Below are positions 3,156 to 55,619 of a stretch of DNA of 64,000 nucleotides, one piece after another. The notes beneath the pieces were generated by a model. The model searched no databases. It was not told the origin of the DNA and saw only the letters and a program-made list of their open reading frames with translations. The stretch spans positions 124,001 to 188,000 of IMG/VR virus record IMGVR_UViG_3300040801_002079; one strand, 5' to 3'. Numbering within the stretch: the first letter of the stretch is position 1; each line of letters opens with the position of its first letter. The position numbers were made by a program, and so were the translations under genes.

Positions 3156-4520
3156 ATGAATGAAGTAAGCACAGGTTTTAATATTTGGCTGGTTCTCGTT
3201 CCCCTCATTTTGGTTGGTGGCGTAGTAATCTGGCTAGGATTATCGAAATGGCTGCGTGTCGCCGTCAAACCCAATGAAGTACATATTGTTCAATCATCAA
3301 ACAAACGTGTTTCGTATGGCGGTGATGGTTCCGCTAAAAACGTTTATTGGCGCTGGCCCGAGTGGGTCCCCATTTTGGGTGTTGAAGTAATTGAGTTACC
3401 TCTTTCCGTATTTGATCTTGATCTTCCTAATTATGAAGCATACGATCAGGACAAAGTACCCTTTATGGTTGATGTAAAGGCGTTCTTCCGCATTATGGAT
3501 TCCCGCATTGCATCAGAGCGAGTAGAAAACATGCATGAACTTAATGAACAGTTGCTTGCGATTGTTCAGGGTACTATTCGTAAGGTTCTTGCCATGCATG
3601 ATGTTGAAAAGATCATGGTTGATCGTGCAACTTTTGGCGAACTCTTTACAGAAGAGACCACTGAGAGTCTTGCAGCATGGGGTGTTGAAAATGTCAAGAA
3701 CATTGAACTCATGGATGTTCGTGACGCTAAAGGCTCTGAAACCATCTCTAACATCATGGCAAAGCGTGAATCTTTTATTGAGAAAGAATCTCGCATTGAA
3801 GTAGCCGAAAACCGTAAAGCAGCCGCCCAGAAAGAAATTGAAGCACAGCGTGAAGTTGATATTTCCGAACAGGAAGCTGAACAAAAGGTTGGTGAGCGCA
3901 CTGCCGAAAAAACCAAGATGGTTGGTATTGCTGAAGAAATGGCTCAGCAGGAAATTAAAGAGCAAGCCCGTGTTACTGCCGAGAAAGATATGGCGGTTAA
4001 AAAGGTTAACGATGTCAGAACTGCTGAAATTAATAGAGAGGTTCGTGTGGTTCAGGCAGACGAAGCCAAGCAGGTTGACATTGTTGAATCCGAAGGTAAG
4101 AAGCAAGAAGCTATCATCGTTGCTGAAGGTATGAAGGAATCTGAATTCTTACGAGCAATGGGTATTGAAAAGGTTGGTAACGCGGAGGCTGAGGCCATTA
4201 AAGCTAAGGGTCTTGCAGAAGTTGCGCCCGATATCCGTCTTGCCGAAGAGATTGGTGAAAATGAAGGATATCAGGAATACCTTGTTAAAATTCGTGTTCA
4301 GGATAAAGAACAAGCGGTTGGTGAAGAAGCTGCAAGAGCACTCCAAACTGGTGATCTTAAAATTATCGCCAATGCTGGAGATGTTAATGGCGGCATGAAT
4401 AGCCTGCTTGATATCTTTTCTTCAAAGGGTGGAACTAACCTTGGTGCAGCGTTAGAGGGTCTTGCTCAAACTGAAGTCGGTGGGGCACTTCTCAATAAGG
4501 TGACTGGAACCAAGGATTGA
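3156..4520 (+). CDS. SPFH/Band-7 flotillin-like membrane protein
   Basis: N-terminal TM helix, SPFH domain, long EA/AE-rich coiled coil, flotillin-like C-terminus. Confidence 0.88.
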   Translation: MNEVSTGFNIWLVLVPLILVGGVVIWLGLSKWLRVAVKPNEVHIVQSSNKRVSYGGDGSAKNVYWRWPEWVPILGVEVIELPLSVFDLDLPNYEAYDQDKVPFMVDVKAFFRIMDSRIASERVENMHELNEQLLAIVQGTIRKVLAMHDVEKIMVDRATFGELFTEETTESLAAWGVENVKNIELMDVRDAKGSETISNIMAKRESFIEKESRIEVAENRKAAAQKEIEAQREVDISEQEAEQKVGERTAEKTKMVGIAEEMAQQEIKEQARVTAEKDMAVKKVNDVRTAEINREVRVVQADEAKQVDIVESEGKKQEAIIVAEGMKESEFLRAMGIEKVGNAEAEAIKAKGLAEVAPDIRLAEEIGENEGYQEYLVKIRVQDKEQAVGEEAARALQTGDLKIIANAGDVNGGMNSLLDIFSSKGGTNLGAALEGLAQTEVGGALLNKVTGTKD

Positions 4521-12121: not shown

Positions 12122-12751
12122 ATGAGATTTGTAAAGTATCCAAAAACAAACTATCTGCCATGGTCACGCTCTATTGGTGAGGGAGACCGTGTACTTAAAC
12201 ATATGGATATATTTGAAAATCAGCGAGTTATTGTAACTGAAAAAATGGATGGTGAAAATACCACCATGTATCACTCTAAGATTCATGCTCGTTCTCTGGA
12301 TTCCGTTAATCACCCCTCTAGAAACTGGGTGAAAAATTATTGGGCATCTATTCAATATAATATCCCACATGATATTCGAATTTGCGGAGAAAACTGCTTC
12401 GCAAAACATTCTATTCATTATACCAAATTGCCATCATATTTTCTAGGATTTAATGCTTGGAAAGAAAACACATGTCTAGAATGGGATGAAACTATGGAAT
12501 TATTTTCAACCATAGGTATATCTCCCGTCAAAGTTTTATACGATGACATATATGATGAAAACTTAATTCGAACTATTCCAATAAATGAATCTAAGTGTGA
12601 AGGCTATGTTATGCGCCTAGCGCGATCATTCACTATGGATGAGTTTCCGCGTGTTGTCGGAAAGTATGTAAGAGAAAATCATGTACAGACCGATGAGCAT
12701 TGGATGAAAGGTCCAATGATACCCAATATTCTTAAGGAAATAACACTATGA
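12122..12751 (+). CDS. rnl: RNA ligase (Rnl2-like nucleotidyltransferase)
   Basis: KYPKT, TEKMDGENT motif I, ICGEN, EGYVMR, KYVRENH. Confidence 0.88.
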   Translation: MRFVKYPKTNYLPWSRSIGEGDRVLKHMDIFENQRVIVTEKMDGENTTMYHSKIHARSLDSVNHPSRNWVKNYWASIQYNIPHDIRICGENCFAKHSIHYTKLPSYFLGFNAWKENTCLEWDETMELFSTIGISPVKVLYDDIYDENLIRTIPINESKCEGYVMRLARSFTMDEFPRVVGKYVRENHVQTDEHWMKGPMIPNILKEITL

Positions 12752-14559: not shown

Positions 14560-14876
14560 ATATGAGAATCAGGACAAAATGGGGTCAAATTATTATAGAC
14601 CCTGAAAGAATTTTTGAAATGCGAGTAGTTGTTAATCCATGGGACAATGTTTACAAAGTAGAGTTTGTCATGGACGGCACATATGAGGTTATACCAGCAG
14701 ATGTGGCAAATGCCAATGAGCTTAACGCTCTTATGCGCAGGGTGACCAATGAACTTCACTTTGTAAAACAATACAAGTTCAAAGATACTACTGGACATTT
14801 GCAGATTAATGAAGCAAGAAGGCGGTCAGCCTTTAAGGAGAGGAAAGAGTATGAAGCGAATAATAATGTACAGTAA
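14556..14876 (+). CDS. hypothetical protein
   Basis: ATGA overlap with the upstream gene. Confidence 0.6.
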   Translation: MNMRIRTKWGQIIIDPERIFEMRVVVNPWDNVYKVEFVMDGTYEVIPADVANANELNALMRRVTNELHFVKQYKFKDTTGHLQINEARRRSAFKERKEYEANNNVQ

Positions 14877-15117
14877 ACCAACATGCAGTTTTTGCACTAA
14901 AGCTAAAAAATTGCTTGATGAGAAAATGGTCCCATATGAGGAAAGAGTGGTTGGGAATGGATATTCGGCAGATCAGGTGAGAGAACATTGTCGAAAATTG
15001 GACCCCAATGCCGTAGTAACAACTGTTCCTCAAATTATTTTACAAATTGATACATCTGAGCAGTACATAGGGGGATATACAGAGTTGGCAGTTAAGGTTC
15101 ATTCTGGAACCTTGTAG
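14851..15117 (+). CDS. nrdC: Glutaredoxin
   Basis: MYSKPTCSFC CxxC, TTVPQI, YIGGYTEL. Confidence 0.9.
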   Translation: MKRIIMYSKPTCSFCTKAKKLLDEKMVPYEERVVGNGYSADQVREHCRKLDPNAVVTTVPQIILQIDTSEQYIGGYTELAVKVHSGTL

Positions 15118-15125
15118 GAGGAAGT

Positions 15126-15443
15126 ATGGATGGTGTTTTAATAGTATTGGCTCTACTTCTGGGCGTTATTATTTCCGCGTGTGCAATAGCATACAAAGAA
15201 AGAAAATTTGAGCCACCGGTCACTGATGAACAAGATAATGTTGTTGTTAACGGCGTTGTTTTGGGTAAGTATTACGGAGACCCTGAAACCAAAACATGCG
15301 TAGAAGTTATAGCGGTTGAAGATGATATGGTCGCCTTTCGACATATGAGCGAAGAAATTCACAGTATGCCAAAAAGCGCATTTTTAGAAAAATATTATAA
15401 GTATCCCAACGGATGTGAGTTCCCGGAAATTGATAGATACTAA
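15126..15443 (+). CDS. membrane-anchored hypothetical protein
   Basis: N-terminal TM helix; GGAGG SD. Confidence 0.65.
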   Translation: MDGVLIVLALLLGVIISACAIAYKERKFEPPVTDEQDNVVVNGVVLGKYYGDPETKTCVEVIAVEDDMVAFRHMSEEIHSMPKSAFLEKYYKYPNGCEFPEIDRY

Positions 15444-15717
15444 AGTAGTACACTGTCAGAGCGAACCATATGATATTTATATTGGTAGACCCAGTATATG
15501 GGGTAATCCGTTCAAAATAAATGATGGGATGACCCGCAAAGAAGCTATAAATGCCTATAGGGATTGGATTCTATATTCCCCAGATGCTGAAGAGCAGCGA
15601 TCTAAATTACACACATTAAAAGGAAAAACACTTGGATGTTGGTGTAAGCCAAAATCATGTCATGGGGATGTTTTGGTTGAATTAGCCGACAATAACGTGC
15701 TAGACTTGCTATCATGA
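15430..15717 (+). CDS. DUF4326 family protein
   Basis: YIGRPSIWGNPF...LKGKTLGCWCKPKSCHGDVL signature. Confidence 0.85.
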   Translation: MIDTKVVHCQSEPYDIYIGRPSIWGNPFKINDGMTRKEAINAYRDWILYSPDAEEQRSKLHTLKGKTLGCWCKPKSCHGDVLVELADNNVLDLLS

Positions 15718-16160
15718 AATACATTAAACAGGACATAACAAAGGTTGAGCGTGGCATCATTGTTCATGGAGTGAATTGTTTAGGTGTTATGGGCAGTGGT
15801 GTCGCGCTAGCTATTCGAAACGCCTTTCCAGTTGTATATGAAAAGTTTAAAGATGCCCCCACTGGAAAAGACATGTTGGGCACCACCCATATGATTACTG
15901 TAAAAGATGATCTTTATGTTGCGAATTGCTACACCCAAGTGAACTATGGTTCAGATAACAGGCGTTACGCAGACTTAGATGCTGTTCGTAAATGTTTAAC
16001 GGATTGCTATGATTTTGCCGATTTAATGCAACTCCCATTATGTTCAGCTAAAATAGCTAGCCTTCGCGGTGGTCTGGATTGGGATACAGAAGTTGAACCT
16101 ATTTTTTTGGAACTAAATAAAGAGTATACGAACGTAGACGTTGCAATTTACTATATATAG
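15714..16160 (+). CDS. Macro domain protein (Poa1p/Appr-1-p processing type)
   Basis: QDITK, IVHGVNCLGVMGSGVA, IASLRGGLDW; ends in TAG. Confidence 0.9.
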   Translation: MKYIKQDITKVERGIIVHGVNCLGVMGSGVALAIRNAFPVVYEKFKDAPTGKDMLGTTHMITVKDDLYVANCYTQVNYGSDNRRYADLDAVRKCLTDCYDFADLMQLPLCSAKIASLRGGLDWDTEVEPIFLELNKEYTNVDVAIYYI

Positions 16161-16169
16161 GAGTATACT

Positions 16170-16355
16170 ATGCTTATTGATGGAACAAACGCTAGTACAG
16201 CAAAATACAATGTAATCGTTAATGGAAGAGTGGTTCGACACAAGGTTCCAAAAATGGTTGCTGAAAACTACATTATAAACTTAGATGAAAATTCACAGAA
16301 AGAGGCCAAAATGGTCCCCGTAACTGATGAAGGAAAAGAAATCTTATTAGGATAG
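16170..16355 (+). CDS. hypothetical protein
   Basis: GGAG SD; same frame as the macro gene; ends in TAG. Confidence 0.65.
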   Translation: MLIDGTNASTAKYNVIVNGRVVRHKVPKMVAENYIINLDENSQKEAKMVPVTDEGKEILLG

Positions 16356-16358
16356 GAA

Positions 16359-16565
16359 ATGGACTTAGAGAAAAAGGAACAGCTAGAAAAGCTGCATGAC
16401 GGAATTGAAGAATTTTTAACATTTATTGAAGAACACGAGGATATTGAAGAGGAAGATGGCGAGTATGAGTTTTTAGCCGATGAATCTGGTGTATCCAATA
16501 CTGAATGGGATAATTTTATTGAATCCCTTAATGTTGTTAGTGAACATATTGAAAAATTAAAATAG
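16359..16565 (+). CDS. small acidic hypothetical protein
   Basis: very Glu/Asp-rich; same frame; ends in TAG. Confidence 0.65.
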   Translation: MDLEKKEQLEKLHDGIEEFLTFIEEHEDIEEEDGEYEFLADESGVSNTEWDNFIESLNVVSEHIEKLK

Positions 16566-16931
16566 ATGTATACTGCATACGTATTAACAGAAAAATCTAG
16601 AAAGACCCTGTTCTTTCTTTTTCCACCAAAATATCCTGAGGTTATTGGTCACCATATAACCGAAACCTTCGGGGTTTCCAAAGATGCTGAAGCTCCGGAA
16701 ATGCCAACGCTTGTTGAGGTTGTTGGCTACATCGACAATGGTGATGGAGTTGAGGGATTCTTGGTGGAAATAGACGGGTCTAGTGATCGCCCATCTGGTG
16801 GTAAATATCACATTACATGGTCAATTGATCGTGATAAGGGATATAAGCCTGTTAATACTAATGATTATACAAATGATGCAAAACCGGTTAAGCCTGTACG
16901 ATTGCAGGTTGAACCCAAAGTGCTCCGGTAG
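16566..16931 (+). CDS. 2H phosphoesterase (cyclic phosphodiesterase-like)
   Basis: two HxT motifs, GHHITE and KYHITW, about 50 aa apart; its stop TAG lies inside the tRNA gene. Confidence 0.65.
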   Translation: MYTAYVLTEKSRKTLFFLFPPKYPEVIGHHITETFGVSKDAEAPEMPTLVEVVGYIDNGDGVEGFLVEIDGSSDRPSGGKYHITWSIDRDKGYKPVNTNDYTNDAKPVKPVRLQVEPKVLR

Positions 16932-16999
16932 CTCAGTTTGGTTAGAGCAAGAGCTTCTAAAACTCATGGTCGTGGGTTCGAATCCCGCCCGGAGCGCCA
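16922..16999 (+). tRNA. tRNA with CUA anticodon in canonical register (putative amber suppressor), encoded CCA
   Basis: 7-bp acceptor GCTCCGG/CCGGAGC, D arm GCTC/GAGC, loop TT-CTA-AA (16955-16961), T arm GTGGG-TTCGAAT-CCCGC, G73, CCA; anticodon stem has two mismatches. Confidence 0.8.
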
Positions 17000-17011
17000 A
17001 GAATTAAAGTT

Positions 17012-17320
17012 ATGTTGACAGAAGGCAAATACAGAAGTAACATAAAAACTGCGGTGTCTAATGTTAGACCTAACCGTCCACCACCAGCACCTAAGGGAAC
17101 TAATACAGTGAAAAAGTCCAGAATAGACATAGATGTAAGCCCTGAAGTCTTTGTTGAAATTTACGAAGCTGTAAGCGATGAAGATACAAAAGCATTTGAT
17201 ATAAATCTCTTTGTTGACGGTAAGTTAGCAGGGAGAATGACAGACATAAGTGCGGAAGATGGGGGCACTTTTTCAACATTAAACGCAAATGCAAGGAGAA
17301 ATATAAAAGATGAGCAATAA
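17012..17320 (+). CDS. hypothetical protein
   Basis: 102-aa ORF after the tRNA. Confidence 0.55.
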   Translation: MLTEGKYRSNIKTAVSNVRPNRPPPAPKGTNTVKKSRIDIDVSPEVFVEIYEAVSDEDTKAFDINLFVDGKLAGRMTDISAEDGGTFSTLNANARRNIKDEQ

Positions 17321-22559: not shown

Positions 22560-23014
22560 TGCAAATCAATGTCAGGGAAAAGAAAATAGAAGATGGTCGC
22601 TTTGGGTTCTTTGGCCCAACGTCCGTACTCTTTACACCCTTTACAAAAATCATATGTGGGGTGTTATTGGTTGGTTTACTGGGAAGTTTGGGTGTAACTA
22701 CTTGGAAGGTTTTTGAAACAAAAAATCTGAAAATTGAATTACTTGAAGTAAAGAATGATAATACGCACCTGAATAATGAACTGGATATCTGTAAATTTGA
22801 ATTGGACGATACAAATATTAGAATTGCAGAAATACAAGCGGCTTCAGAAAAGGATATGCAGATCATAAGGGAAGTTAATGAAGAACTCAGTAAACTTACC
22901 GTTGAACAGAAAAAAGAAATTAATAGACTGAAATCATTACCCGCACCAGAGGGGTGTGATGGAGCCACGGAATGGTTACGGGATAATCTGGACATATTTA
23001 CGAGGCAGCAATGA
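22559..23014 (+). CDS. Putative i-spanin (Rz-like)
   Basis: single TM helix, periplasmic coiled coil, C-terminal Cys; adjacent to a lipoprotein. Confidence 0.7.
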   Translation: MQINVREKKIEDGRFGFFGPTSVLFTPFTKIICGVLLVGLLGSLGVTTWKVFETKNLKIELLEVKNDNTHLNNELDICKFELDDTNIRIAEIQAASEKDMQIIREVNEELSKLTVEQKKEINRLKSLPAPEGCDGATEWLRDNLDIFTRQQ

Positions 23015-23472
23015 AAAATCTAATAGTGTTAAGCATAAGTGCAATCATACTAATGGGCTGTGGTCATCAGCAAGTTAAAACTGTATATCAGGATAAGTAT
23101 ATCCCCATACCTATTGTTCCAGCACCACCCGAGGTTGCAAAACCTGAATATTATTCAGAAACACTAACCGATGAGCAAAAAGAAGACATTGGTGAGTTGG
23201 CTAAAGCTTACGTTATAGACTCTAAGCAAGCAAAGGCTTATGCTGATAACCTTGAACGAGTGTATGAAACATACGGTGATATGGCAACAAGCTCAGAAAA
23301 CCGATTAAAAGCATTAGAAAGTCTGGGAGCTACTGTTGATAGAAGTTTAATGGAGCAGGCATCTGCCGAGATTAATACTGAACTAAAATCACTATCTTTG
23401 CAAATTGAAACGAACAGCGAAGAGGTTGATTCGGACATAGAAGAACTCAGGCAGATGAAAAAGCCTGAATAG
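23011..23472 (+). CDS. Putative o-spanin (Rz1-like lipoprotein)
   Basis: signal peptide with lipobox LMGC, Pro-rich IPIPIVPAPP segment. Confidence 0.72.
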   Translation: MKNLIVLSISAIILMGCGHQQVKTVYQDKYIPIPIVPAPPEVAKPEYYSETLTDEQKEDIGELAKAYVIDSKQAKAYADNLERVYETYGDMATSSENRLKALESLGATVDRSLMEQASAEINTELKSLSLQIETNSEEVDSDIEELRQMKKPE

Positions 23473-23496: not shown

Positions 23497-23817
23497 ATGA
23501 AATTAAAAACTTTATTCGAAGCCAAAAAATCAGAAGATAAGGTGGTATTTAAGGAAACTGATCCGCAGTTGCCGTTTCCTAATGATACCATCACGGCTAT
23601 TAAAAAGAGAATTAATGTTTTTGCTAAGGACTTGACAACCGACTGGGATAGTGCAGTTGAAATGTTAGATGCTGTCCTTATGGAATTGAAAGTTCCAAAG
23701 CCTCAAGCTTATTTAAAAGAGCGGTGGAGACAATACCAAGAGTTAATTGAATTTACAGTAGAAAATTTATATGACTCTAGGGGCTTTGGTGGCAACTGGA
23801 ATAGAGTTGTAAAATAA
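23497..23817 (+). CDS. Putative head-internal protein
   Basis: late promoter 23485-23491; MKLKTLFEA N-terminus. Confidence 0.65.
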   Translation: MKLKTLFEAKKSEDKVVFKETDPQLPFPNDTITAIKKRINVFAKDLTTDWDSAVEMLDAVLMELKVPKPQAYLKERWRQYQELIEFTVENLYDSRGFGGNWNRVVK

Positions 23818-32505: not shown

Positions 32506-33957
32506 ATGAACATGAACACAACTTTTCTAAAATCAATTCTTAACGTACACGGTGCGAAGACCGATGGATACAAGTTTGATCATCACAAGCAGACTGTTCC
32601 CGGTATGACCAACGCCTTTTCTTACATCGAATCCCGAGGAACTAACTTGGATTGGGATAACCCCCGAACCCTGTTCTTTGGATTACAGATGTATCTTAAA
32701 GAGTATATGACTCAGCCTGTTACTCATGAAGATATCGATGCCATCATTCCCCTAGTGGAAAAATATGGTGTTGAATTCAACGAGAAGGGATGGAGACATA
32801 TTGTTGATGCCCATGGAGGCATTCTTCCATTGAAAATTCGGGCAGTTAAAGAGGGTACAGTGATGCCATTAAGTAATGTAATGGTGTCAGTTGAAGCCAC
32901 TGATCCCGAGTGCTACTGGTTAGCACCTTTCGTAGAAACTGCTTTGCTCCGTGCAGTGTGGTATCCAACCACGGTTGCATCCAATTCATTCCGCGCCAAG
33001 GAAATCATCAAAGGATTCTTGGATGAGACTGCTGATAACGGTGATCTTGAACTTCCGTTCAAGTTGCATGACTTCGGTGCAAGGGGTGTATCTTCCGCTG
33101 AAAGTGCACAGATTGGAGGTGCAGCACATCTTGTCAACTTCATGGGTTCTGATACCTTTGAGGGTGCGCTTGCAGCCATGTTGTATTACGACACTGATAT
33201 GCCAGCCGGTACGATTCCTGCTGCCGAACACTTCACCATTACCTCTTGGGGTCCAGAAGGTGAAACCAGTGCGTACCGAAATATGCTTCGGACTTTCGGT
33301 GGTCCTGATAAAATGCTTGCAGTGGTGTCTGATTCTTACGACATGTATAATGCTGCCGAGCATATTTGGGGTGAAGAGCTTCGTGATGACGTTATCAACA
33401 TGGGTGGAACCTTAGTGGTTCGTCCTGATTCTGGTGACCCACTGGTTGTTCCCGTTGATGTCATTGAAATTTTAATGGAGAAGTTTGGTTACACTATCAA
33501 CAAGAAGGGATACAAGGTTCTTCCTGATTGCATTCGAGTTATTCAGGGTGACGGTATCACCGTTGATAACATCAAAGCCATTCTTACTCGCATGAAGTCT
33601 CGTAAGCTTAGCGCATCTAATATTGCATTCGGAATGGGCGCTGGTCTGCTTCAGCAGGTTGACCGTGATACCTACAAGTTTGCAATGAAGTGTTCTGCAA
33701 AGGAAATCAATGGTCGATGGGAAGATGTTTGGAAAGACCCTAAGACTGATTCCGGTAAGAAGTCCAAGCGTGGTCGTGTCACGCTGGTACAGGATCGCAA
33801 TACAAAAGAGTTTAGAACCATTAGACTTGATGGGCCAACTTCTGTTAAGGAAACGGAACTAAATGTAATGCGAACTGTATATAATAACGGTGTTGTTGAG
33901 TCCGAGTTTCAGACGTTTGACGAAATTCGTGAACTTTCAAATTCGTACTTGAAATAA
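32506..33957 (+). CDS. nadV: Nicotinamide phosphoribosyltransferase
   Basis: TDGYKFDH, LHDFGARGVS, PAAEH, VVSDSYD, VVRPDSGDP, VIQGDG, FGMGAGLLQ; SD spacing favours ATG 32512. Confidence 0.96.
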   Translation: MNMNTTFLKSILNVHGAKTDGYKFDHHKQTVPGMTNAFSYIESRGTNLDWDNPRTLFFGLQMYLKEYMTQPVTHEDIDAIIPLVEKYGVEFNEKGWRHIVDAHGGILPLKIRAVKEGTVMPLSNVMVSVEATDPECYWLAPFVETALLRAVWYPTTVASNSFRAKEIIKGFLDETADNGDLELPFKLHDFGARGVSSAESAQIGGAAHLVNFMGSDTFEGALAAMLYYDTDMPAGTIPAAEHFTITSWGPEGETSAYRNMLRTFGGPDKMLAVVSDSYDMYNAAEHIWGEELRDDVINMGGTLVVRPDSGDPLVVPVDVIEILMEKFGYTINKKGYKVLPDCIRVIQGDGITVDNIKAILTRMKSRKLSASNIAFGMGAGLLQQVDRDTYKFAMKCSAKEINGRWEDVWKDPKTDSGKKSKRGRVTLVQDRNTKEFRTIRLDGPTSVKETELNVMRTVYNNGVVESEFQTFDEIRELSNSYLK

Positions 33958-39455: not shown

Positions 39456-40029
39456 GCCCGTACCACAAACCGACTATGATCCGCGTGATCCAATTGGAAC
39501 AGTGTATACATTTAGACATCCCGATGGTATGCGTGGCACCGTAACTGTATTAGAAAAAATTGAAGATGAAGCCTCAGGGGTATTTGTCGGAGTGAAGTTT
39601 TCCGAGGAAACCAATGATGCCATAATGAATTTTATTGAATCTCAGGATATCCCAAATCCTGTAACAAAAGATAAACTACATTGTACTGTTATGTACACAT
39701 ATAGTGATGCCCCTGATTTAATTGAAGAAAGTAGACCCCCTCTTATCCCCGCATGGAATGCTACACCGGATAAATTTGAAATATTTGAAACACAGGATGA
39801 TAATAATTGCTTGGTTTTAAGAATAAAATGTGATGAACTAACCGAAAGGCATGAGAAAATCATAGCGGATTACGGAGTTGTTTATACGCACGAGGAATAC
39901 AAGCCACATATAACATTATCATATGATTGTGGAGATTTCGATATTTCAACGTTGGACAAAGATGCGTTACCTGATGAAATCCTTATAACAGAGGAGTATG
40001 CATCATCGATTGATCCAGACTGGGTATAG
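39436..40029 (+). CDS. acb1: Anti-CBASS nuclease Acb1 / T4 gp57B-like 2H phosphoesterase with N-terminal extension
   Basis: VGVKFSEET...IPNPV...KLHCTVMY...YKPHITLSY...EEY...DPDW follows T4 gp57B along its length. Confidence 0.85.
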   Translation: MKLRHLKPVPQTDYDPRDPIGTVYTFRHPDGMRGTVTVLEKIEDEASGVFVGVKFSEETNDAIMNFIESQDIPNPVTKDKLHCTVMYTYSDAPDLIEESRPPLIPAWNATPDKFEIFETQDDNNCLVLRIKCDELTERHEKIIADYGVVYTHEEYKPHITLSYDCGDFDISTLDKDALPDEILITEEYASSIDPDWV

Positions 40030-40031
40030 TG

Positions 40032-40038
40032 ATAAATA
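40032..40038 (+). promoter_or_regulatory. T4-type late promoter driving the tmRNA
   Basis: ATAAATA just after the acb1 stop and before the acceptor piece. Confidence 0.7.
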
Positions 40039-40043
40039 AGTAT

Positions 40044-40328
40044 AACATTGTACGATCCATTTAAGGATTTATTGTGGACGGCGGTTCGATTCCGCCCATT
40101 TCCACCAAAAGCATACCTAATGGGTATATTTTATGATGGGAATGCACTGGTTTCGACATGGTAAGTTGGTAAATGAGGACAATGCGGCAACCGTGAAAGT
40201 CGTTAGGGTAAAACCAAAGAAGCAAAAAACTAAATGCAAACGATAGCATATATGATCAGGCCCTTGCCGCTTGATCGTGGGTTTAGCCAACCTTGAACCA
40301 GAACGGGTTAGGGGGGAGTAATCCCCCC
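40044..40328 (+). ncRNA. ssrA: Circularly permuted (two-piece) tmRNA; tag ANDSIYDQALAA
   Basis: acceptor piece with T arm and CATTTCC-A-CCA ends at 40107; coding piece starts GGGAATG at 40138 (G3:U70, A73); tag frame 40236-40274; terminator 40311-40328; late promoter 40032-40038. Confidence 0.9.
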
Positions 40329-40351
40329 GAATTTTATCAAAAGGGACTTCT

Positions 40352-44550: not shown

Positions 44551-45933
44551 ATGGAAATTACTAGCAATATTAAAAACAAAATAGAAGAAATTTATAAAGA
44601 TTCTAATTATAATGTTAGAACCGTTAGCTTAGGACGCAAAAAGGTTGGAGATGAAAAAACGGATGAAATTGCCATTGTCATTCGAGTAGAAAAGAAAAAA
44701 CCTTTAAGTGAATTGAGCGCAGACGAAATTGTTCCAAAAACAATAACTATAGATGGACAAGATTTTAAGACTGATGTTATCGAAGACCCTAGTGAAATTA
44801 CAGCAATAGCCTGCTTTACTTCAACTGATCCTGACGTTTTAAAGTTGCAGGGTGACCCAGCGCTTCTTACTCCTCTTAAGGGTGGACAAGAACTTACACA
44901 ATTCCCAACAGGGTGGACAGACTTTGGTGGCGGAAGCTATGGATTCACTGTGGGAACATTGGGATTCATCGGAGTAGATGACATTGATGGAAAAATTGTC
45001 GGTGTGACCAATAATCATGTAGTAATTGGGAACGGAGATATAAATGGAGACAGGGATATACCGACAGAGGTTGCATCCCCATATAATATTATTGAACCTA
45101 TAGAATGGGTGGTTGATAGCTCATCGTATGCTCCCGGAGCATTACTACGTGATGAAAGTGCCCCCGGAACATTTGTAGATGGCGCACCAAATATCAAGAG
45201 ATATATTCCATTTGATGTAGATGGAACAAACTATGTGGATGTTGCGCTTCTGATTATGGACCCAACGAAGGTTGACAACACATCATATCAAATACACCAA
45301 CCAACAGGGGAGACAGCATATACGGATTATTTGCCATTTGCAAGCACCGCAGAGATCGATAGTTTACTAGCTACTCCCAGAACAATATACAGTACAGGAA
45401 GAACTACGGGACCAAAGGGGTGGGGAGTAAGTGCTTCATGTACATTAGAAATAACAGCATTAGCTGAAACCATTAGTGTTAGTGGGTTATCCGATACAAA
45501 CTTAACCTTTTCAGATGTTGTGCGATTTGAGTTTACTGATGGCAGTAATTATCCAATCGATAGTGGAGATTCTGGATCAGCCGTTGTTGCAGATTTTGAT
45601 GGAACTAGAAAAATAGTAGGGTTAGCATTTGCAGGAAGCCTAACAGCAGGATTCTTCTGTAGAATTGATCGAATAGCTGATGCTATAAAAATACGCCAGT
45701 GGGATGAGCACTATGTTTACGATGATACTGTTCCAGCAGGGGCCACACTTAAAGCTGCACCCATTGAGGATTCATCAGCGGATAGTGTAACTGTTACTCC
45801 TGAATGTAAATATCTATTCCAAGCTGGAACATCAATGACAGATACATATGATGATCTATTAGCTATAACTCCACTAGCGTGTTCAGTTACGCCAACTGTT
45901 ACACCCGAAGTAACACCAACCCCATCTGGTTAG
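44551..45933 (+). CDS. Trypsin-like (S1) serine protease with N-terminal prodomain and TPTV tail
   Basis: GTLG, TNNHV (His), VDVALL (Asp), GDSGS (Ser), VGLAFAG. Confidence 0.85.
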   Translation: MEITSNIKNKIEEIYKDSNYNVRTVSLGRKKVGDEKTDEIAIVIRVEKKKPLSELSADEIVPKTITIDGQDFKTDVIEDPSEITAIACFTSTDPDVLKLQGDPALLTPLKGGQELTQFPTGWTDFGGGSYGFTVGTLGFIGVDDIDGKIVGVTNNHVVIGNGDINGDRDIPTEVASPYNIIEPIEWVVDSSSYAPGALLRDESAPGTFVDGAPNIKRYIPFDVDGTNYVDVALLIMDPTKVDNTSYQIHQPTGETAYTDYLPFASTAEIDSLLATPRTIYSTGRTTGPKGWGVSASCTLEITALAETISVSGLSDTNLTFSDVVRFEFTDGSNYPIDSGDSGSAVVADFDGTRKIVGLAFAGSLTAGFFCRIDRIADAIKIRQWDEHYVYDDTVPAGATLKAAPIEDSSADSVTVTPECKYLFQAGTSMTDTYDDLLAITPLACSVTPTVTPEVTPTPSG

Positions 45934-51802: not shown

Positions 51803-53353
51803 CTAGTCGTAACCAAGTATTCTTAACTCTGTCAGACATGAACCCGGACATATACTGCAATCATAATAGTGATTCCAAGTGCTATTAAATTTATATGTCG
51901 ATCCGGGGTTAACTCGTTGATTCGATCCTCCGGTTTGAGTTGCATCCTCGGTTAACCACCATGTAATAGATGTACCAACCGAATCTGTCGCTCTAATATA
52001 TCCCCATACTTCAGTCCAGAATCCAAGATAGCTTGCTTTATCTAAATCGTACCAAAGATCATCATTACCTGTATAGGTGTCAACCCTAGTATAACATGCC
52101 TCTCCGGGATCAACATTAATTCTAATTTCATTAACCCCGCTTGATTGTCGCGTTCCGCCACCATAATAAACTCTCAGTTCAGGCTCGACTGGAAGTGGAT
52201 ATGGATTAGGATCGGTAGGCCACATCATGTATCCAGTAGTATTATCAGTTCCAGCAGAATAGATATTACTCATATCAACAGTGTAAGGTGGAACGCCGCC
52301 AGATAACCCAACTAGATATACACTAACTGTTCTCTCAAGAGCATAAGAAAAATATAAATGTCTAAACGCTGCAACCGTTGCTGGGTCCTGATCGGGCCAC
52401 ACAAGATCGCCACACGAGTTTTTATGGTAAGTTGGTGAGCCACTACTAACGTCATTTGTGTATCCCGGTGAAGGGTACACATATAATCTAGCATCTCTGC
52501 CAAACGGCTCAACACTATTGGGTGGGGTTGATGCGGGTGTGCTCGTTGGCGTTGGCGCAAGAGGTGACGGTGATGGTGTAACAGAATTTGTGGGGGTAAC
52601 TGTTGGGGTTGCGCCAAATGTTGGTGTAGGGGTAGCAGTCGGTGCTGGTGTTTGGGTCGGGGTTATAACTGGGGGATTAATGTTATTAATTCCTCTGTTA
52701 ACATTTCCACGTATGCCAATAATCATGTAATTGGCAATACCGTTTATCAGCGTTGAGTCTCCCGTAACCCTGTATTGCATTGTGACCCGCGCATCATCAT
52801 CATCCGTTGAGCATACCATGAAGTCAATTTCATCATCATAATGATATGGACCCACCATCCAAGAACATTCTTCATATGTAAAGGTTGCACCCGTGCTTGA
52901 CACTGGAAGGGGAATCTGTTCCCCGTGTGCAATGGTTCCATAGTTTGCGGCTATTTCAGAAAATAAACTGAGGGGTACCCAAGTGCCAACATCATTAATC
53001 ATTTTATAAACAAAAAGATGCCCTTCGGTTGATGATGTAAGACCACTGCTTGCAGGAAATCCGGAATTGTACCAAAGCTGTCCTTCAATTGCATTTTCTA
53101 ATGTGTGTCGAATAGCTCCCTCTGTTTCAAGGGTTTCAGATTCAGAGCTAATAAAGGGGTTACCCGCATTCTGAGGGTCTTCGGGACAAGCAAAGTTTTC
53201 CAATAAATGAAGAAGGTTTTCATTCATTAATTCTCCATATTCCAATCTCTCCCTGCCAAATAAAGCAATAGCCAAGTCTTGGTTTATGGTTTTTTCATCC
53301 ACATTAGTGGATGGTTTACTTTTATCTGTTCTGTTAATTACATAAGTAACCAT
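51803..53353 (-). CDS. Virion fibre protein, paralog 2
   Basis: same N-module; PT linker; end DCSICPGSC. Confidence 0.8.
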   Translation of the reverse strand: MVTYVINRTDKSKPSTNVDEKTINQDLAIALFGRERLEYGELMNENLLHLLENFACPEDPQNAGNPFISSESETLETEGAIRHTLENAIEGQLWYNSGFPASSGLTSSTEGHLFVYKMINDVGTWVPLSLFSEIAANYGTIAHGEQIPLPVSSTGATFTYEECSWMVGPYHYDDEIDFMVCSTDDDDARVTMQYRVTGDSTLINGIANYMIIGIRGNVNRGINNINPPVITPTQTPAPTATPTPTFGATPTVTPTNSVTPSPSPLAPTPTSTPASTPPNSVEPFGRDARLYVYPSPGYTNDVSSGSPTYHKNSCGDLVWPDQDPATVAAFRHLYFSYALERTVSVYLVGLSGGVPPYTVDMSNIYSAGTDNTTGYMMWPTDPNPYPLPVEPELRVYYGGGTRQSSGVNEIRINVDPGEACYTRVDTYTGNDDLWYDLDKASYLGFWTEVWGYIRATDSVGTSITWWLTEDATQTGGSNQRVNPGSTYKFNSTWNHYYDCSICPGSCLTELRILGYD

Positions 53354-54950: not shown

Positions 54951-55619
54951 CTATAAATCTAACTGAGACAAGTAATTTTTGACCTCATTAATTGATCCTT
55001 TATTAACATCAAGTATTAATTGCCACTTATCTAAGTTTATAACAGACTCTATTAATTTCTGCTCTTCATAGTTGGTTTCATTCCTAACATATTCGTGAAA
55101 TTTTTTACTCAATAATAATGCCCAAGGGGATAAGTTTCTAGACTGTATCAGTTTTATCAAATCCTGTGGCTTCAAATGAGAATAAACCTCAGATATTTTA
55201 CACCCAAATGCAGAAGATAACCTCTCCATTGTTGTCAATGTTATGCGCAGATGAACCTTAGCGTCATTCTCTTTATCAAACTGGTTTATAAAGTATGAGT
55301 AGATATCATCATTGTACCAATGCTGTGGGAGTATTGAATCCTTTGCCATTAGTTCAATATACAACGACACATCCGGAATTCCCATTTTTAGTGCGTAGTC
55401 TGTAAATGTATAAAATACCTTATAATACTTTGACCCTATGAAGATTTCTTGAGAAGGATTAGGGAGGTTGCGCTTCTTAAACCATGTTTGGTAGTTTTTA
55501 TATGCCATCTTTCCACGAGGTGTCTTGAGTTCCCCAATACGAGTCTCCTCATCACACTTATGCTTGGTGTAATTTTCTTCTTTAATAAACTTAGTTTTAC
55601 AATATTCACATTCAAACAT
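54951..55619 (-). CDS. hypothetical protein with N-terminal zinc finger
   Basis: FECEYCKTKF...HKC; in the clamp-loader operon. Confidence 0.65.
   Translation of the reverse strand: MFECEYCKTKFIKEENYTKHKCDEETRIGELKTPRGKMAYKNYQTWFKKRNLPNPSQEIFIGSKYYKVFYTFTDYALKMGIPDVSLYIELMAKDSILPQHWYNDDIYSYFINQFDKENDAKVHLRITLTTMERLSSAFGCKISEVYSHLKPQDLIKLIQSRNLSPWALLLSKKFHEYVRNETNYEEQKLIESVINLDKWQLILDVNKGSINEVKNYLSQLDL

What the first reader, a model, noticed from the sequence alone, without database searches (positions are those of the whole stretch)
15714..17018. Four consecutive same-frame ORFs punctuated only by amber codons, ending inside an amber-anticodon tRNA
Seen: macro domain (15714-16160, TAG), 9 nt GAG TAT ACT, ORF 16170-16355 (TAG), 3 nt GAA, ORF 16359-16565 (TAG), 0 nt, 2H phosphoesterase 16566-16931 (TAG). 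All starts are in one frame with no other stop until TGA at 17016-17018. The fourth TAG lies within the first 10 nt of a tRNA whose anticodon reads CUA. Other TAG-ending genes checked (3106, 15117, 17870, 51803) do not fuse in frame to a neighbour. Inference: suppressor-dependent read-through could yield graded fusions up to about 434 aa joining a macro domain to a 2H cyclic phosphodiesterase, which act sequentially on ADP-ribose-1'',2''-cyclic phosphate. This would be a tRNA-gated polyprotein switch. Caveat: two of the TAGs double as TAGGA Shine-Dalgarno starts, which partly explains TAG choice but not the shared frame.
Basis: partly seen in the sequence, partly recalled or inferred. Interest (0 to 1): 0.85.

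Follow-up and report, generated by a model that had tools for sequence, protein, structure and literature searches.

The report
Amber-linked gene chain beside suppressor tRNA
In an uncultivated giant phage, four small RNA-repair genes sit in one reading frame separated only by amber stop codons, directly upstream of the phage's own amber-suppressor tRNA; fused proteins are therefore physically likely, but relatives show that the four-gene chain is not a conserved device.

Summary
Four ORFs (macro domain, 61 aa, acidic 68 aa, 121-aa minimal 2H phosphodiesterase) share one frame. All end in TAG, with spacers of 9, 3 and 0 nt. The fourth TAG is U8-A9-G10 of a tRNA with anticodon CUA.

The window uses the standard code, and a run like this is rare in it (shuffle P about 0.001).

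The tRNA belongs to a real, covarying family with an invariant CUA anticodon. It is attached to the 3' end of the 2H gene in all 14 related lineages I recovered.

The full four-TAG in-frame chain recurs in one diverged relative (L037, 62% nt identity, different spacer lengths). It is broken in the nearest relatives of both chain-bearing genomes and absent in 12 of 14 lineages.

Amber stops in this module are nevertheless in frame with the next ORF more often than TAA/TGA stops (15/21 against 6/21). The signal is strongest after the acidic ORF (9/9 against 1/5).

Verdict: read-through fusions are a likely physical consequence of this arrangement, and selection may act on single junctions. A conserved "tRNA-gated polyprotein switch" is not supported. 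I rate it a new variant of phage suppressor-tRNA biology, of moderate interest.

The parts
15714..16160 (+). Macro-domain gene (148 aa). Its start overlaps the upstream DUF4326 stop (ATGA). It ends in TAG at 16158-16160 inside TAGGAG.
   Evidence: ORF. Pfam Macro, weak (E=0.007); phrog_335, E=3.7e-31. PDB macro domains 5m3i and 2fg1, E=5.7e-7 and 1.3e-5.
16161..16169 (+). 9-nt stop-free in-frame spacer GAG TAT ACT. It carries the GGAG ribosome-binding site for the next ORF.
16170..16355 (+). 61-aa ORF of unknown function, conserved next to the macro gene in relatives. It ends in TAG and is followed by the 3-nt spacer GAA.
   Evidence: homologues at 29-57% identity; no family.
16359..16565 (+). 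68-aa strongly acidic ORF of unknown function. It ends in TAG, which abuts the next ATG (TAGATG).
   Evidence: no family.
16566..16931 (+). 121-aa minimal 2H (cyclic) phosphodiesterase-like gene. Invariant residues include H30-x-T32 and H82-I-T84-W-S86. The last 10 nt, stop included, lie inside the tRNA gene.
   Evidence: alignment A1. AF2 model, pLDDT 97.3; best fold matches are 2H enzymes, including a phage PDE (9q2y), CNPase, Trl1 and Acb1. Atlas neighbours carry PF08302 tRNA_lig_CPD and 2H-SAK; 1570 family representatives.
16922..16999 (+). tRNA gene with anticodon CUA (amber suppressor) and an encoded CCA. Anticodon-stem positions 27-43 and 31-39 are mismatched. U8-A9-G10 forms the TAG stop of the 2H gene.
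   Evidence: ARAGORN. Rfam RF00005, 61 bits; in 13 family members CUA is invariant, 15 of 21 pairs show compensatory changes and 94.5% of cells pair.
16932..17018 (+). 28-codon read-through tail across the tRNA gene to TGA at 17016-17018. It overlaps the ATG (17012) of the next gene and a TTGACA-type promoter-like site.
12122..12751 (+). RNA ligase gene (context: same strand, upstream block).
   Evidence: PF09414, E=3.5e-30.
14851..15117 (+). Glutaredoxin gene. It ends in TAG and is out of frame with the next gene. It is syntenic with the module in relatives.
15430..15717 (+). DUF4326 gene immediately upstream of the macro gene.
   Evidence: PF14216, E=6.4e-28.

Best explanation
What it is. 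These are four separately initiated genes of a conserved phage RNA-repair / ADP-ribose-processing module: a macro domain, two small proteins of unknown function, and a minimal 2H cyclic phosphodiesterase. A functional phage amber-suppressor tRNA gene is attached to the module's 3' end.

Shown:
- The tRNA family is real and under selection.
- The tRNA is linked to the 2H gene in every member of this clade that I recovered.
- The four ORFs are separate genes with varied frames in relatives.
- This genome and one other carry all-amber, all-in-frame junctions.

Inferred:
- When the tRNA is expressed and charged, part of the ribosomes read through each TAG. In this genome they then continue in frame into the next gene. 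The result is a minority of nested fusion proteins (macro-61, 61-68, 68-2H and longer) beside the four free proteins.
- The four-ORF chain as such is an evolutionarily labile, lineage-specific configuration.
- Selection appears to favour three narrower features. The first is the tRNA-2H linkage. The second is an amber stop on the ORF that abuts the tRNA. The third is frame continuity behind amber stops at single junctions, above all behind the acidic ORF.
For: tRNA function:
- CUA is invariant in 13 members. Compensatory changes occur in 15 of 21 pairs, and no shuffle in 500 reached the observed values.

Linkage:
- tRNA-CUA follows or overlaps the 2H gene in 14 of 14 lineages of the clade. That clade has 100% support in the tree.

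Separate genes:
- Each ORF has its own ATG, and two have a GGAG or AGGA site.
- Relatives keep the gene order macro-61-acidic-2H but in mixed frames and with TAA/TGA stops.

Standard code:
- The window has dense long ORFs under code 11 and no excess of TAG flanked by long open frames.

Recurrence:
- L037 (62% nt identity to the window) has TAG at all four stops with spacers of 24, 3 and 3 nt, all in frame, plus the tRNA.
- Its flanking orthologues changed their stops.

Association of amber with frame:
- Over 14 lineages, amber stops are in frame and unblocked in 15/21 cases, against 6/21 for TAA/TGA (p=0.013).
- Behind the acidic ORF the figures are 9/9 against 1/5 (p=0.005). The 9 cases span five different architectures: gaps of 0, 3 and 9 nt, and two different inserted ORFs.
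- A uniform ORF caller gives 12/20 against 6/34 (p=0.0025).

2H stop:
- It is TAG in 11/14 linked loci against about 12/83 unlinked loci (p=3e-6).
Against: - The full chain occurs in only 2 of 14 lineages.
- It is broken in L097 (TAA at junction 2) and in L107 (82% nt identical to L037; 23-nt spacer and TAA).
- L099, L101, L102 and L109 have no amber-fusable junction within the module (L104 and L110 have one only into an inserted ORF).
- After collapsing sister lineages with identical junction architecture, the amber/frame association is only p=0.09 (J3 alone 0.048). Shared ancestry (an ancestral TAG-in-frame state against a derived TAA-out-of-frame state) could produce much of it.
- At the macro|61 junction TAG is common (9/14) but in frame only at the chance rate. 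It is plausibly explained by the TAGGAG ribosome-binding overlap.
- Outside this block the window shows no such tendency (1/8).
- There are no RNA or protein data. The same-sample metatranscriptome contigs did not cover the locus.
- The amino-acid identity of the tRNA is unknown, and its anticodon stem has two mismatches.
Confidence: 0.5

Rival explanations
1. Selected tRNA-gated polyprotein switch. The all-amber, all-in-frame chain is adaptive. As the co-transcribed suppressor tRNA accumulates, output shifts from four free proteins to graded fusions that couple macro and 2H activities.
For: - The full chain occurs twice, in WIN and L037, on different branches and with different spacer lengths that remain multiples of three.
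- From per-junction frequencies, 0.28 full chains are expected in 14 lineages. Two are seen (P=0.03).
- The shuffle probability within the window is 0.001.
- The tRNA lies in the same apparent transcription unit. No terminator-like site lies between 13.85 and 17.0 kb.
- Macro and 2H enzymes act consecutively on Appr>p in the fungal tRNA-splicing pathway (established knowledge).
Against: - 12 of 14 lineages lack the chain.
- The nearest relatives of both chain-bearing genomes break it by single-base events.
- No macro-2H natural fusion appeared among the 150 best of 1570 family representatives. The fusions seen are to other domains.
- The fourth TAG leads only into tRNA sequence.
Confidence: 0.12
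2. Pure coincidence with passive consequences. Stops and frames drift neutrally. TAG is favoured locally by the TAGGAG and TAGATG start contexts and by the tRNA's own TAGCTCAG. Fusions may form but are neither selected for nor against.
For: - The chain is labile.
- Junction 1 shows no amber/frame association.
- The collapsed test is not significant (p=0.09).
- tRNA-less relatives show the same direction weakly (11/24 against 52/180, p=0.10).
- The scan looked at many windows and many kinds of pattern.
Against: - Junction 3 is in frame in 9/9 amber cases over five independent architectures. Four independent in-frame events have probability about 0.012 by chance.
- In-frame junctions in the clade are mostly amber (15 of 21), although amber is about a quarter of the stops in the flanks.
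- Further amber in-frame junctions appear at other positions of the same operon in relatives. Examples are L099 grx-TAG-ORF-TAG-DUF4326, and junctions in L102 and L106.
Confidence: 0.28
3. Stop-codon recoding. TAG is a sense codon here (code-15-like), and the four ORFs are really one gene.
For: - There is a phage tRNA-CUA.
- Recoded phages with suppressor tRNAs are known (bioRxiv 10.1101/2021.08.26.457843).
Against: - Treating TAG as sense adds little coding length, less than treating TGA or TAA as sense does.
- Large genes are intact under code 11.
- TAG is a normal 17-20% of stops.
- Every TAG in the chain sits exactly at a gene boundary, followed by an ATG.
- The same four proteins are separate genes in different frames in relatives.
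- TAG-ending late genes have TAA/TGA back-up stops 1-3 codons later.
Confidence: 0.03
4. The tRNA is not an active suppressor (a decoy, a pseudogene or another role), so no read-through occurs.
For: - There are two mismatches in the anticodon stem. C31.A39 is seen in 8 of 13 members.
- The discriminator base varies (G, A, U).
- The authors of the XacN1 paper found no target for its two homologous tRNAs (PMC5852040).
Against: - There is strong covariation in all four stems, an invariant U33-C34-U35-A36-A37, and an encoded CCA.
- The family is retained across very diverged phages, including XacN1 and L036.
- These are signatures of a translated-codon reader rather than of a decaying gene.
Confidence: 0.07

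Closest known systems
Suppressor tRNA(CUA) genes of standard-code jumbo phages (Xanthomonas phage XacN1, two tandem copies; Ralstonia phage RsoM2USA)
   Same: It is the same tRNA family. XacN1 copy 2 is 85% identical over 72 nt, with the same anticodon arm AAGAGCYTCTAAAACTC. The phage type is the same: a large standard-code genome. XacN1 also has a permuted tmRNA 1 kb away.
   Different: In XacN1 and L036 the neighbouring genes end in TAA/TGA and are out of frame. The XacN1 authors found no read-through target. Here the tRNA is attached to one specific gene module that carries amber in-frame junctions.
Stop-codon-recoded phages (crAss-like, Lak and others; TAG read as Gln) with their own suppressor tRNAs
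   Same: A phage-encoded tRNA-CUA changes how TAG is read during infection. A timing or regulatory role has been proposed.
   Different: In recoded phages TAG lies inside conserved, mostly late genes, and the genome is unreadable under code 11. Here the genome reads normally, and the TAGs are genuine gene ends that happen to join neighbouring ORFs.
Programmed stop-codon read-through in viruses (Q-beta A1 coat extension; MuLV Gag-Pol at UAG)
   Same: A leaky stop joins an upstream protein in frame to downstream coding sequence, giving a minor extended product beside the major short one (established knowledge).
   Different: Those cases use host near-cognate tRNAs, involve one stop and have a strictly conserved frame. 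Here a dedicated virus-encoded suppressor sits next to the target, several stops are in series, the downstream ORFs also initiate on their own, and conservation is weak.
Fungal/plant tRNA ligase CPD domain with the Appr>p pathway (Trl1 CPD or Cpd1, then Poa1 macro); 'Swiss Army Knife' RNA-repair 2H domains
   Same: The 121-aa protein has two HxT motifs, a predicted 2H fold, and Atlas neighbours that carry PF08302 and PF22547. A macro gene and an RNA ligase gene lie nearby.
   Different: It is much smaller (121 aa against about 180-250) and falls below Pfam thresholds. No activity has been tested. I did not look for a kinase or Tpt1 partner across the whole genome.

Membership tests
tRNA (amber suppressor) | Cloverleaf with four helices supported by covariation | tested here: met
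   Rfam RF00005, 61 bits. In 13 homologues 94.5% of cells pair, 15 of 21 pairs show compensatory changes and 0 of 500 shuffles reach the observed values.
tRNA (amber suppressor) | Anticodon CUA in a 7-nt loop with U33 and a purine at 37 | tested here: met
   TCTAA is invariant in all 13 sequences. ARAGORN reports CUA in every lineage.
tRNA (amber suppressor) | Is aminoacylated and suppresses UAG in vivo | not testable with these tools
   The discriminator base varies (G/A/U). The body resembles phage Arg(UCU) and Lys tRNAs but lacks A20 and C35. The amino acid it carries is unknown.
Stop-codon recoding (code 15-like phage genes) | In-frame TAG inside genes whose homologues are continuous across that position | tested here: not met
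   All four TAGs lie at the boundaries of genes that are separate, in other frames or with TAA/TGA stops, in relatives.
Stop-codon recoding (code 15-like phage genes) | Coding density or gene length collapses under the standard code | tested here: not met
   93 dense ORFs under code 11, with TAG at 20% of stops.
Programmed translational read-through | Leaky stop followed in frame by an open, coding extension | tested here: met
   the extensions are 64, 69 and 121 codons, each being the next gene.
Programmed translational read-through | Stop identity and frame conserved among relatives | tested here: inconclusive
   The full chain is in 2 of 14 lineages. Junction 3 is in frame in 9/9 amber cases, but the collapsed overall test gives p=0.09.
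Programmed translational read-through | Extended product detected | not testable with these tools
   No RNA coverage in the same-sample metatranscriptome contigs. No proteome data.
2H phosphoesterase superfamily | Two H-x-T/S motifs on central strands of a pseudo-symmetric two-lobe fold | tested here: met
   H30, T32, H82, T84 and S86 are invariant in 24 sequences. The model has pLDDT 97 with both motifs on strands. The best fold matches are 2H enzymes, but with weak E-values of 8e-5 to 0.3.
2H phosphoesterase superfamily | Sequence match to a curated family model | tested here: not met
   No Pfam hit at E<=0.1. No PDB sequence or profile hit. The only family evidence is language-model neighbours carrying PF08302 and PF22547.
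Macro domain | Sequence match to macro-domain structures or models | tested here: met
   PDB 5m3i at E=5.7e-7, plus 2fg1, 2afc and 5m31. phrog_335 at 3.7e-31. The Pfam match is below the gathering score (16.7 against 22 bits).

The most novel reading that the evidence does not exclude
The suppressor tRNA and its upstream operon form a self-contained read-through device.

The amber-terminated ORFs of the RNA-repair module are extended into their neighbours only once the phage's own tRNA-CUA has accumulated. This applies at least to the acidic ORF, and in some lineages to the whole chain.

The amber stop that abuts or lies inside the tRNA gene lets suppressor-dependent ribosomes run into the tRNA precursor. 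That would give feedback on tRNA maturation. Where the tRNA overlaps the gene, RNase P cleavage would conversely leave the 2H message without a stop codon, making it a substrate for the phage's own tmRNA.
Probability: 0.15. Interest if true: 0.85.

Novelty: new variant of a known kind. Interest (0 to 1): 0.55.

Why it matters
Suppressor tRNAs are annotated in several standard-code jumbo phages. No target has been identified for them: the XacN1 study looked and found none.

This clade offers the first concrete candidates. The tRNA-CUA is invariably attached to one gene module, and that module's amber stops tend to open in frame into the next gene.

If read-through is real, a virus would be using its own tRNA to make alternative protein forms from ordinary neighbouring genes. 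That lies between classical programmed read-through and full stop-codon recoding, and it could represent an early stage on the path to recoding.

The idea can be tested directly with a 1.3-kb construct. If read-through is not real, the case is a useful warning that a striking single-genome pattern (P about 0.001) can be evolutionarily ephemeral.

Tried and rejected
- Nucleotide search of the locus against GenBank phages found no match.
- Genome-wide recoding was rejected.
- Sequence and profile searches of the 2H-like protein against the PDB found nothing meaningful. Pfam found nothing either. The family assignment rests on motifs, fold and Atlas neighbours.
- I looked for natural macro-2H fusions among 1570 family representatives. 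The long proteins inspected carry other domains (GNAT-like, ParB-like, polyvalent proteins) and not a macro domain.
- The two small ORFs have no family in Pfam, PHROGs or the Atlas.
- My early conclusion from IMG/VR relatives alone was 'no tRNA, mixed frames, therefore chance'. It was premature, because those loci belong to an outgroup that lacks the adjacent tRNA. The metagenome and protein-database relatives changed the picture.
- My first enthusiasm after finding L037 was then tempered by 12 further tRNA-linked lineages without the full chain.
- Metatranscriptome runs of the same sample hold none of the locus. The DNA contigs only confirm the letters.
- The base following each TAG is a purine at in-frame and out-of-frame junctions alike, so it does not discriminate.
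- I could not assign the tRNA's amino-acid identity from its sequence.
- I could not read the remaining 253 kb of the contig to look for further amber targets.
Full report
**1. The observation**

ORFs 15714-16160 (148 aa), 16170-16355 (61 aa), 16359-16565 (68 aa) and 16566-16931 (121 aa) are in one frame. Each starts with ATG and each ends in TAG. The spacers are GAGTATACT, GAA and nothing. The next in-frame stop is TGA at 17016-17018.

ARAGORN and Rfam find one tRNA in the window, at 16922-16999, with anticodon CUA (61 bits). The fourth TAG is positions 8-10 of that tRNA, within the almost universal TAGCTCAG of the D arm. That stop is therefore supplied by the tRNA itself.

Contigs of three DNA runs from one microbial-mat sample agree letter for letter over all four TAGs. 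They may be the data the window was assembled from. No RNA contig of that sample covers the locus.

**2. Is it more than chance within this genome?**

The window is bases 124001-188000 of a 316.8-kb IMG/VR contig, a jumbo phage.

The standard code fits. My gene list has 93 dense ORFs, including one of 1540 aa. Stops are TAA 58, TAG 19 and TGA 16. There is no excess of TAG flanked by long open frames.

Of 81 same-strand junctions, 17 follow a TAG and 11 are 'fusable', meaning in frame with no intervening stop. Four junctions are both: three of them are this run, and the fourth is 23011-23472|23497-23817. Shuffling stops and frames independently gives a run of three with P about 0.001 per window.

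So the run is unusual for one genome. It was, however, found by a scan over many windows and many kinds of pattern.

**3. What the genes are**

- The macro gene matches solved macro domains (5m3i at E=5.7e-7) and phrog_335.
- The 121-aa protein has no Pfam or PDB sequence match. In 24 homologues, H30-x-T32 and H82-I-T84-W-S86 are invariant.
- An AlphaFold model of it has pLDDT 97.3, with both motifs on strands. Its best fold matches are 2H enzymes: a phage phosphodiesterase (9q2y), CNPase, the Trl1 CPD region, Acb1 and giant-virus RNA ligase proteins. Their E-values are weak.
- Its protein-language-model neighbours carry PF08302 (tRNA ligase CPD) and PF22547 (2H-SAK).
- The family has 1570 representatives, mostly stand-alone proteins of 120-135 aa. 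Some are embedded in polyvalent proteins. None of those I inspected is fused to a macro domain.
- The 61-aa ORF and the acidic 68-aa ORF have no known family.
- On the same strand upstream lie an RNA ligase (PF09414), a glutaredoxin and a DUF4326 gene. A NAMPT gene lies further on.

Together this is an RNA-repair / NAD-ADP-ribose island.

**4. The tRNA**

The closest GenBank relative is one of two tandem 'tRNA-Sup' genes of Xanthomonas jumbo phage XacN1. It is 85% identical and has the same anticodon arm. The next best matches are phage tRNA-Arg(UCU) and tRNA-Lys genes.

I aligned 13 members from this clade, XacN1 and a further contig. U33-C34-U35-A36-A37 is invariant. All four stems covary, with 15 of 21 pairs showing compensatory changes, and no shuffle in 500 reached the observed values. 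This is a gene under selection to read UAG.

The amino acid it carries cannot be told from the sequence. The discriminator base varies, and the Arg identity elements A20 and C35 are absent.

The XacN1 authors read through all 18 amber stops of that genome in silico and found no target (PMC5852040). RsoM2USA also carries one such tRNA (PMC8504454).

**5. Relatives: first impression**

29 IMG/VR loci encode the 2H protein. Apart from the window itself they are at most 64% identical. They have no tRNA nearby. Their 2H gene mostly ends in TAA or TGA. Where the gene order macro-61-acidic-2H is kept, the frames and stops are mixed.

**6. Relatives: the tRNA-linked clade**

The metagenome scan and the protein database gave closer relatives, at 67-82% identity in the 2H protein. 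With the window these make 14 lineages: WIN, L097, L037, L105, L107, L099, L101, L102, L109, L104, L110, L100, L106 and L108.

In all 14 a tRNA-CUA follows or overlaps the 2H gene. In L100 it comes after one extra ORF that itself ends in the tRNA's TAG.

In a concatenated-protein tree built from ten of the 14 lineages (L107-L110 were fetched later and not included), they form a clade with 100% support, separate from the tRNA-less loci. Within it, (WIN, L097) and (L037, L105) are sister pairs.

**7. The chain in the clade**

L037 is 62% identical to the window at the nucleotide level. It has the whole pattern: TAG at all four stops, spacers of 24, 3 and 3 nt, all in frame and stop-free, and the tRNA 4 nt after the last TAG. 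Its flanking orthologues have changed their stops (grx TAG to TAA, the next gene TAA to TGA, the NT5C-like gene TAA to TAG).

The nearest relatives of both chain-bearing genomes break the chain:
- L097 has TAA at junction 2.
- L107 is 82% nt identical to L037. It has a 23-nt spacer at junction 1 and TAA at junction 2.

L099, L101, L102 and L109 have no amber-fusable junction within the module. L104 and L110 have one only into an inserted small ORF.

Junction by junction, the counts are as follows.

| Junction | Amber stop, next ORF in frame | TAA/TGA stop, next ORF in frame | Fisher p |
|---|---|---|---|
| J1, macro to 61 | 3 of 9 | 1 of 5 | 1 |
| J2, 61 to acidic | 3 of 3 | 4 of 11 | 0.19 |
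| J3, acidic to next ORF | 9 of 9 | 1 of 5 | 0.005 |
| All three | 15 of 21 | 6 of 21 | 0.013 |

- At J1, TAG is common but is in frame only at the chance rate. It usually sits inside TAGGAG.
- At J3, the nine amber cases span five architectures. Gaps of 0, 3 and 9 nt lead into the 2H gene. A 27-nt gap leads into an inserted small membrane ORF in L104 and L110. A 3-nt gap leads into a different inserted ORF in L106.
- After collapsing sister lineages with the same architecture, the overall p is 0.09 and the J3 p is 0.048.
- From the per-junction frequencies, 0.28 full chains are expected in 14 lineages. Two are seen (P=0.03).

A uniform ORF caller gives amber-fusable junctions in 12/20 cases against 6/34 in the clade loci (p=0.0025). 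In tRNA-less relatives it gives 11/24 against 52/180 (p=0.10). In the rest of the window it gives 1/8 against 7/23.

Amber in-frame junctions also turn up at other places in the same operon in relatives. In L099 the order is grx-TAG-9 nt-ORF-TAG-0 nt-DUF4326. L102 and L106 have further examples.

The 2H gene ends in TAG in 11 of 14 linked loci, against about 12 of 83 unlinked loci (p=3e-6). In five of the eleven this is the tRNA's own U8-A9-G10.

**8. Reading**

Three things are well supported:
- The four ORFs are separate genes.
- The tRNA is a functional amber reader fixed to this module.
- In this genome, and in L037, any suppression must carry ribosomes in frame into the next gene.

That fusions form is an inference from these facts and was not observed.

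The comparative data argue against a conserved four-protein 'switch', because the chain is gained or lost by single-base events between close relatives. They also argue against pure indifference. Amber stops here open in frame into the next ORF too often, especially behind the acidic ORF, where indels and even gene insertions have kept the frame. Shared ancestry could still explain part of this, and the sample is small.

I therefore commit to the intermediate model, with confidence about 0.5. Read-through happens. Selection acts on it at single junctions, either for a product or against out-of-frame run-on into the next start. The full chain is an incidental combination of such junctions.

**9. 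Comparison with known systems**

It works like programmed read-through (Q-beta A1, MuLV Gag-Pol), but with a virus-encoded dedicated suppressor, serial stops and downstream ORFs that also initiate on their own.

It shares the tRNA with recoded phages but fails their defining tests. No TAG lies inside a conserved gene, and the genome reads normally under code 11.

I found no description of suppressor-tRNA-mediated joining of neighbouring phage genes in the papers searched. That literature search was limited.

**10. Verdict**

- It is a new variant of phage suppressor-tRNA biology.
- Interest is 0.55.
- The bolder reading, a self-contained read-through device with feedback through the tRNA precursor and the phage tmRNA, is not excluded (probability about 0.15).

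Noticed in passing
window 39996-40331 (+); L032:4066-4486: The phage encodes a permuted (two-piece type) tmRNA. Rfam gives RF04321 at 123 bits and RF01850 at 99 bits. The tag peptide is ANDSIYDQALAA. XacN1 has a similar tmRNA about 1 kb from its two tRNA-Sup genes, and the main text of the XacN1 paper does not mention a tmRNA. Suppressor tRNA and tmRNA may be functionally linked, for example through rescue of ribosomes that read through terminal stops.
   Followed up: partly
A 153-aa ORF ends in TAG, followed by a 24-nt stop-free in-frame spacer and a 106-aa ORF. Neither ORF has an informative family.
   Followed up: partly
window 16922-16931: The tRNA gene overlaps the last 10 nt of the 2H gene. 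RNase P cleavage at the tRNA 5' end would remove that gene's stop codon and leave a non-stop message. The same overlap (gctccgGTAG or similar) is kept in L097, L099, L104 and L110. In the other lineages the tRNA starts 0-7 nt after the stop.
   Followed up: partly
L104:3328-3501, L110:1442-1606, L106:3278-3493: Three relatives have an extra small ORF inserted between the acidic ORF and the 2H gene. In L104 and L110 it is a predicted membrane peptide, and in L106 it is a different ORF of about 70 aa. Each is in frame behind the acidic ORF's TAG. The 27-nt spacer in L104 and L110 also looks like an extended -10 promoter (TGTTATACT).
   Followed up: partly
L099:1747-2631; L102:2130-2690; L106:1769-2428: In relatives that lack amber junctions inside the macro-2H module, amber in-frame junctions occur just upstream. 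In L099 the order is glutaredoxin-TAG-9 nt-ORF-TAG-0 nt-DUF4326. L102 and L106 each have a single such junction into DUF4326.
   Followed up: no
window 44551-45933 (+), 51803-53353 (-), 54951-55619 (-): Three large TAG-ending genes outside the early block are in frame with the next gene by spacing. Each has a TAA or TGA back-up stop 1-3 codons after the TAG. This is as expected if amber read-through is real and is limited at these genes.
   Followed up: no
window 16950-16964 and alignment A4 columns 33/41: The anticodon stem of this tRNA family has a non-standard 31-39 pair (mostly C.A) in 8 of 13 members and a weak 27-43 pair. The body is closest to phage tRNA-Arg(UCU) and tRNA-Lys genes but lacks the Arg identity elements A20 and C35.
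   Followed up: partly
window 32512-33957 (+); 12122-12751 (+); 3156-4520 (+): The window also encodes a nicotinamide phosphoribosyltransferase (NAMPT; PF04095 at 3e-58), an RNA ligase (PF09414) and an SPFH/Band 7 protein. With the macro, DUF4326 and 2H genes, these point to an NAD/ADP-ribose and RNA-repair gene set.
   Followed up: no
window 17015-17043 (+); L032:3075-3105: A TTGACA-type promoter-like site lies directly after the tRNA (TTGACA-17-TAACAT). XacN1 has TTGACA-17-TATACT in the same position after its second tRNA-Sup. This suggests that the tRNA closes one transcription unit and the next begins there.
   Followed up: no
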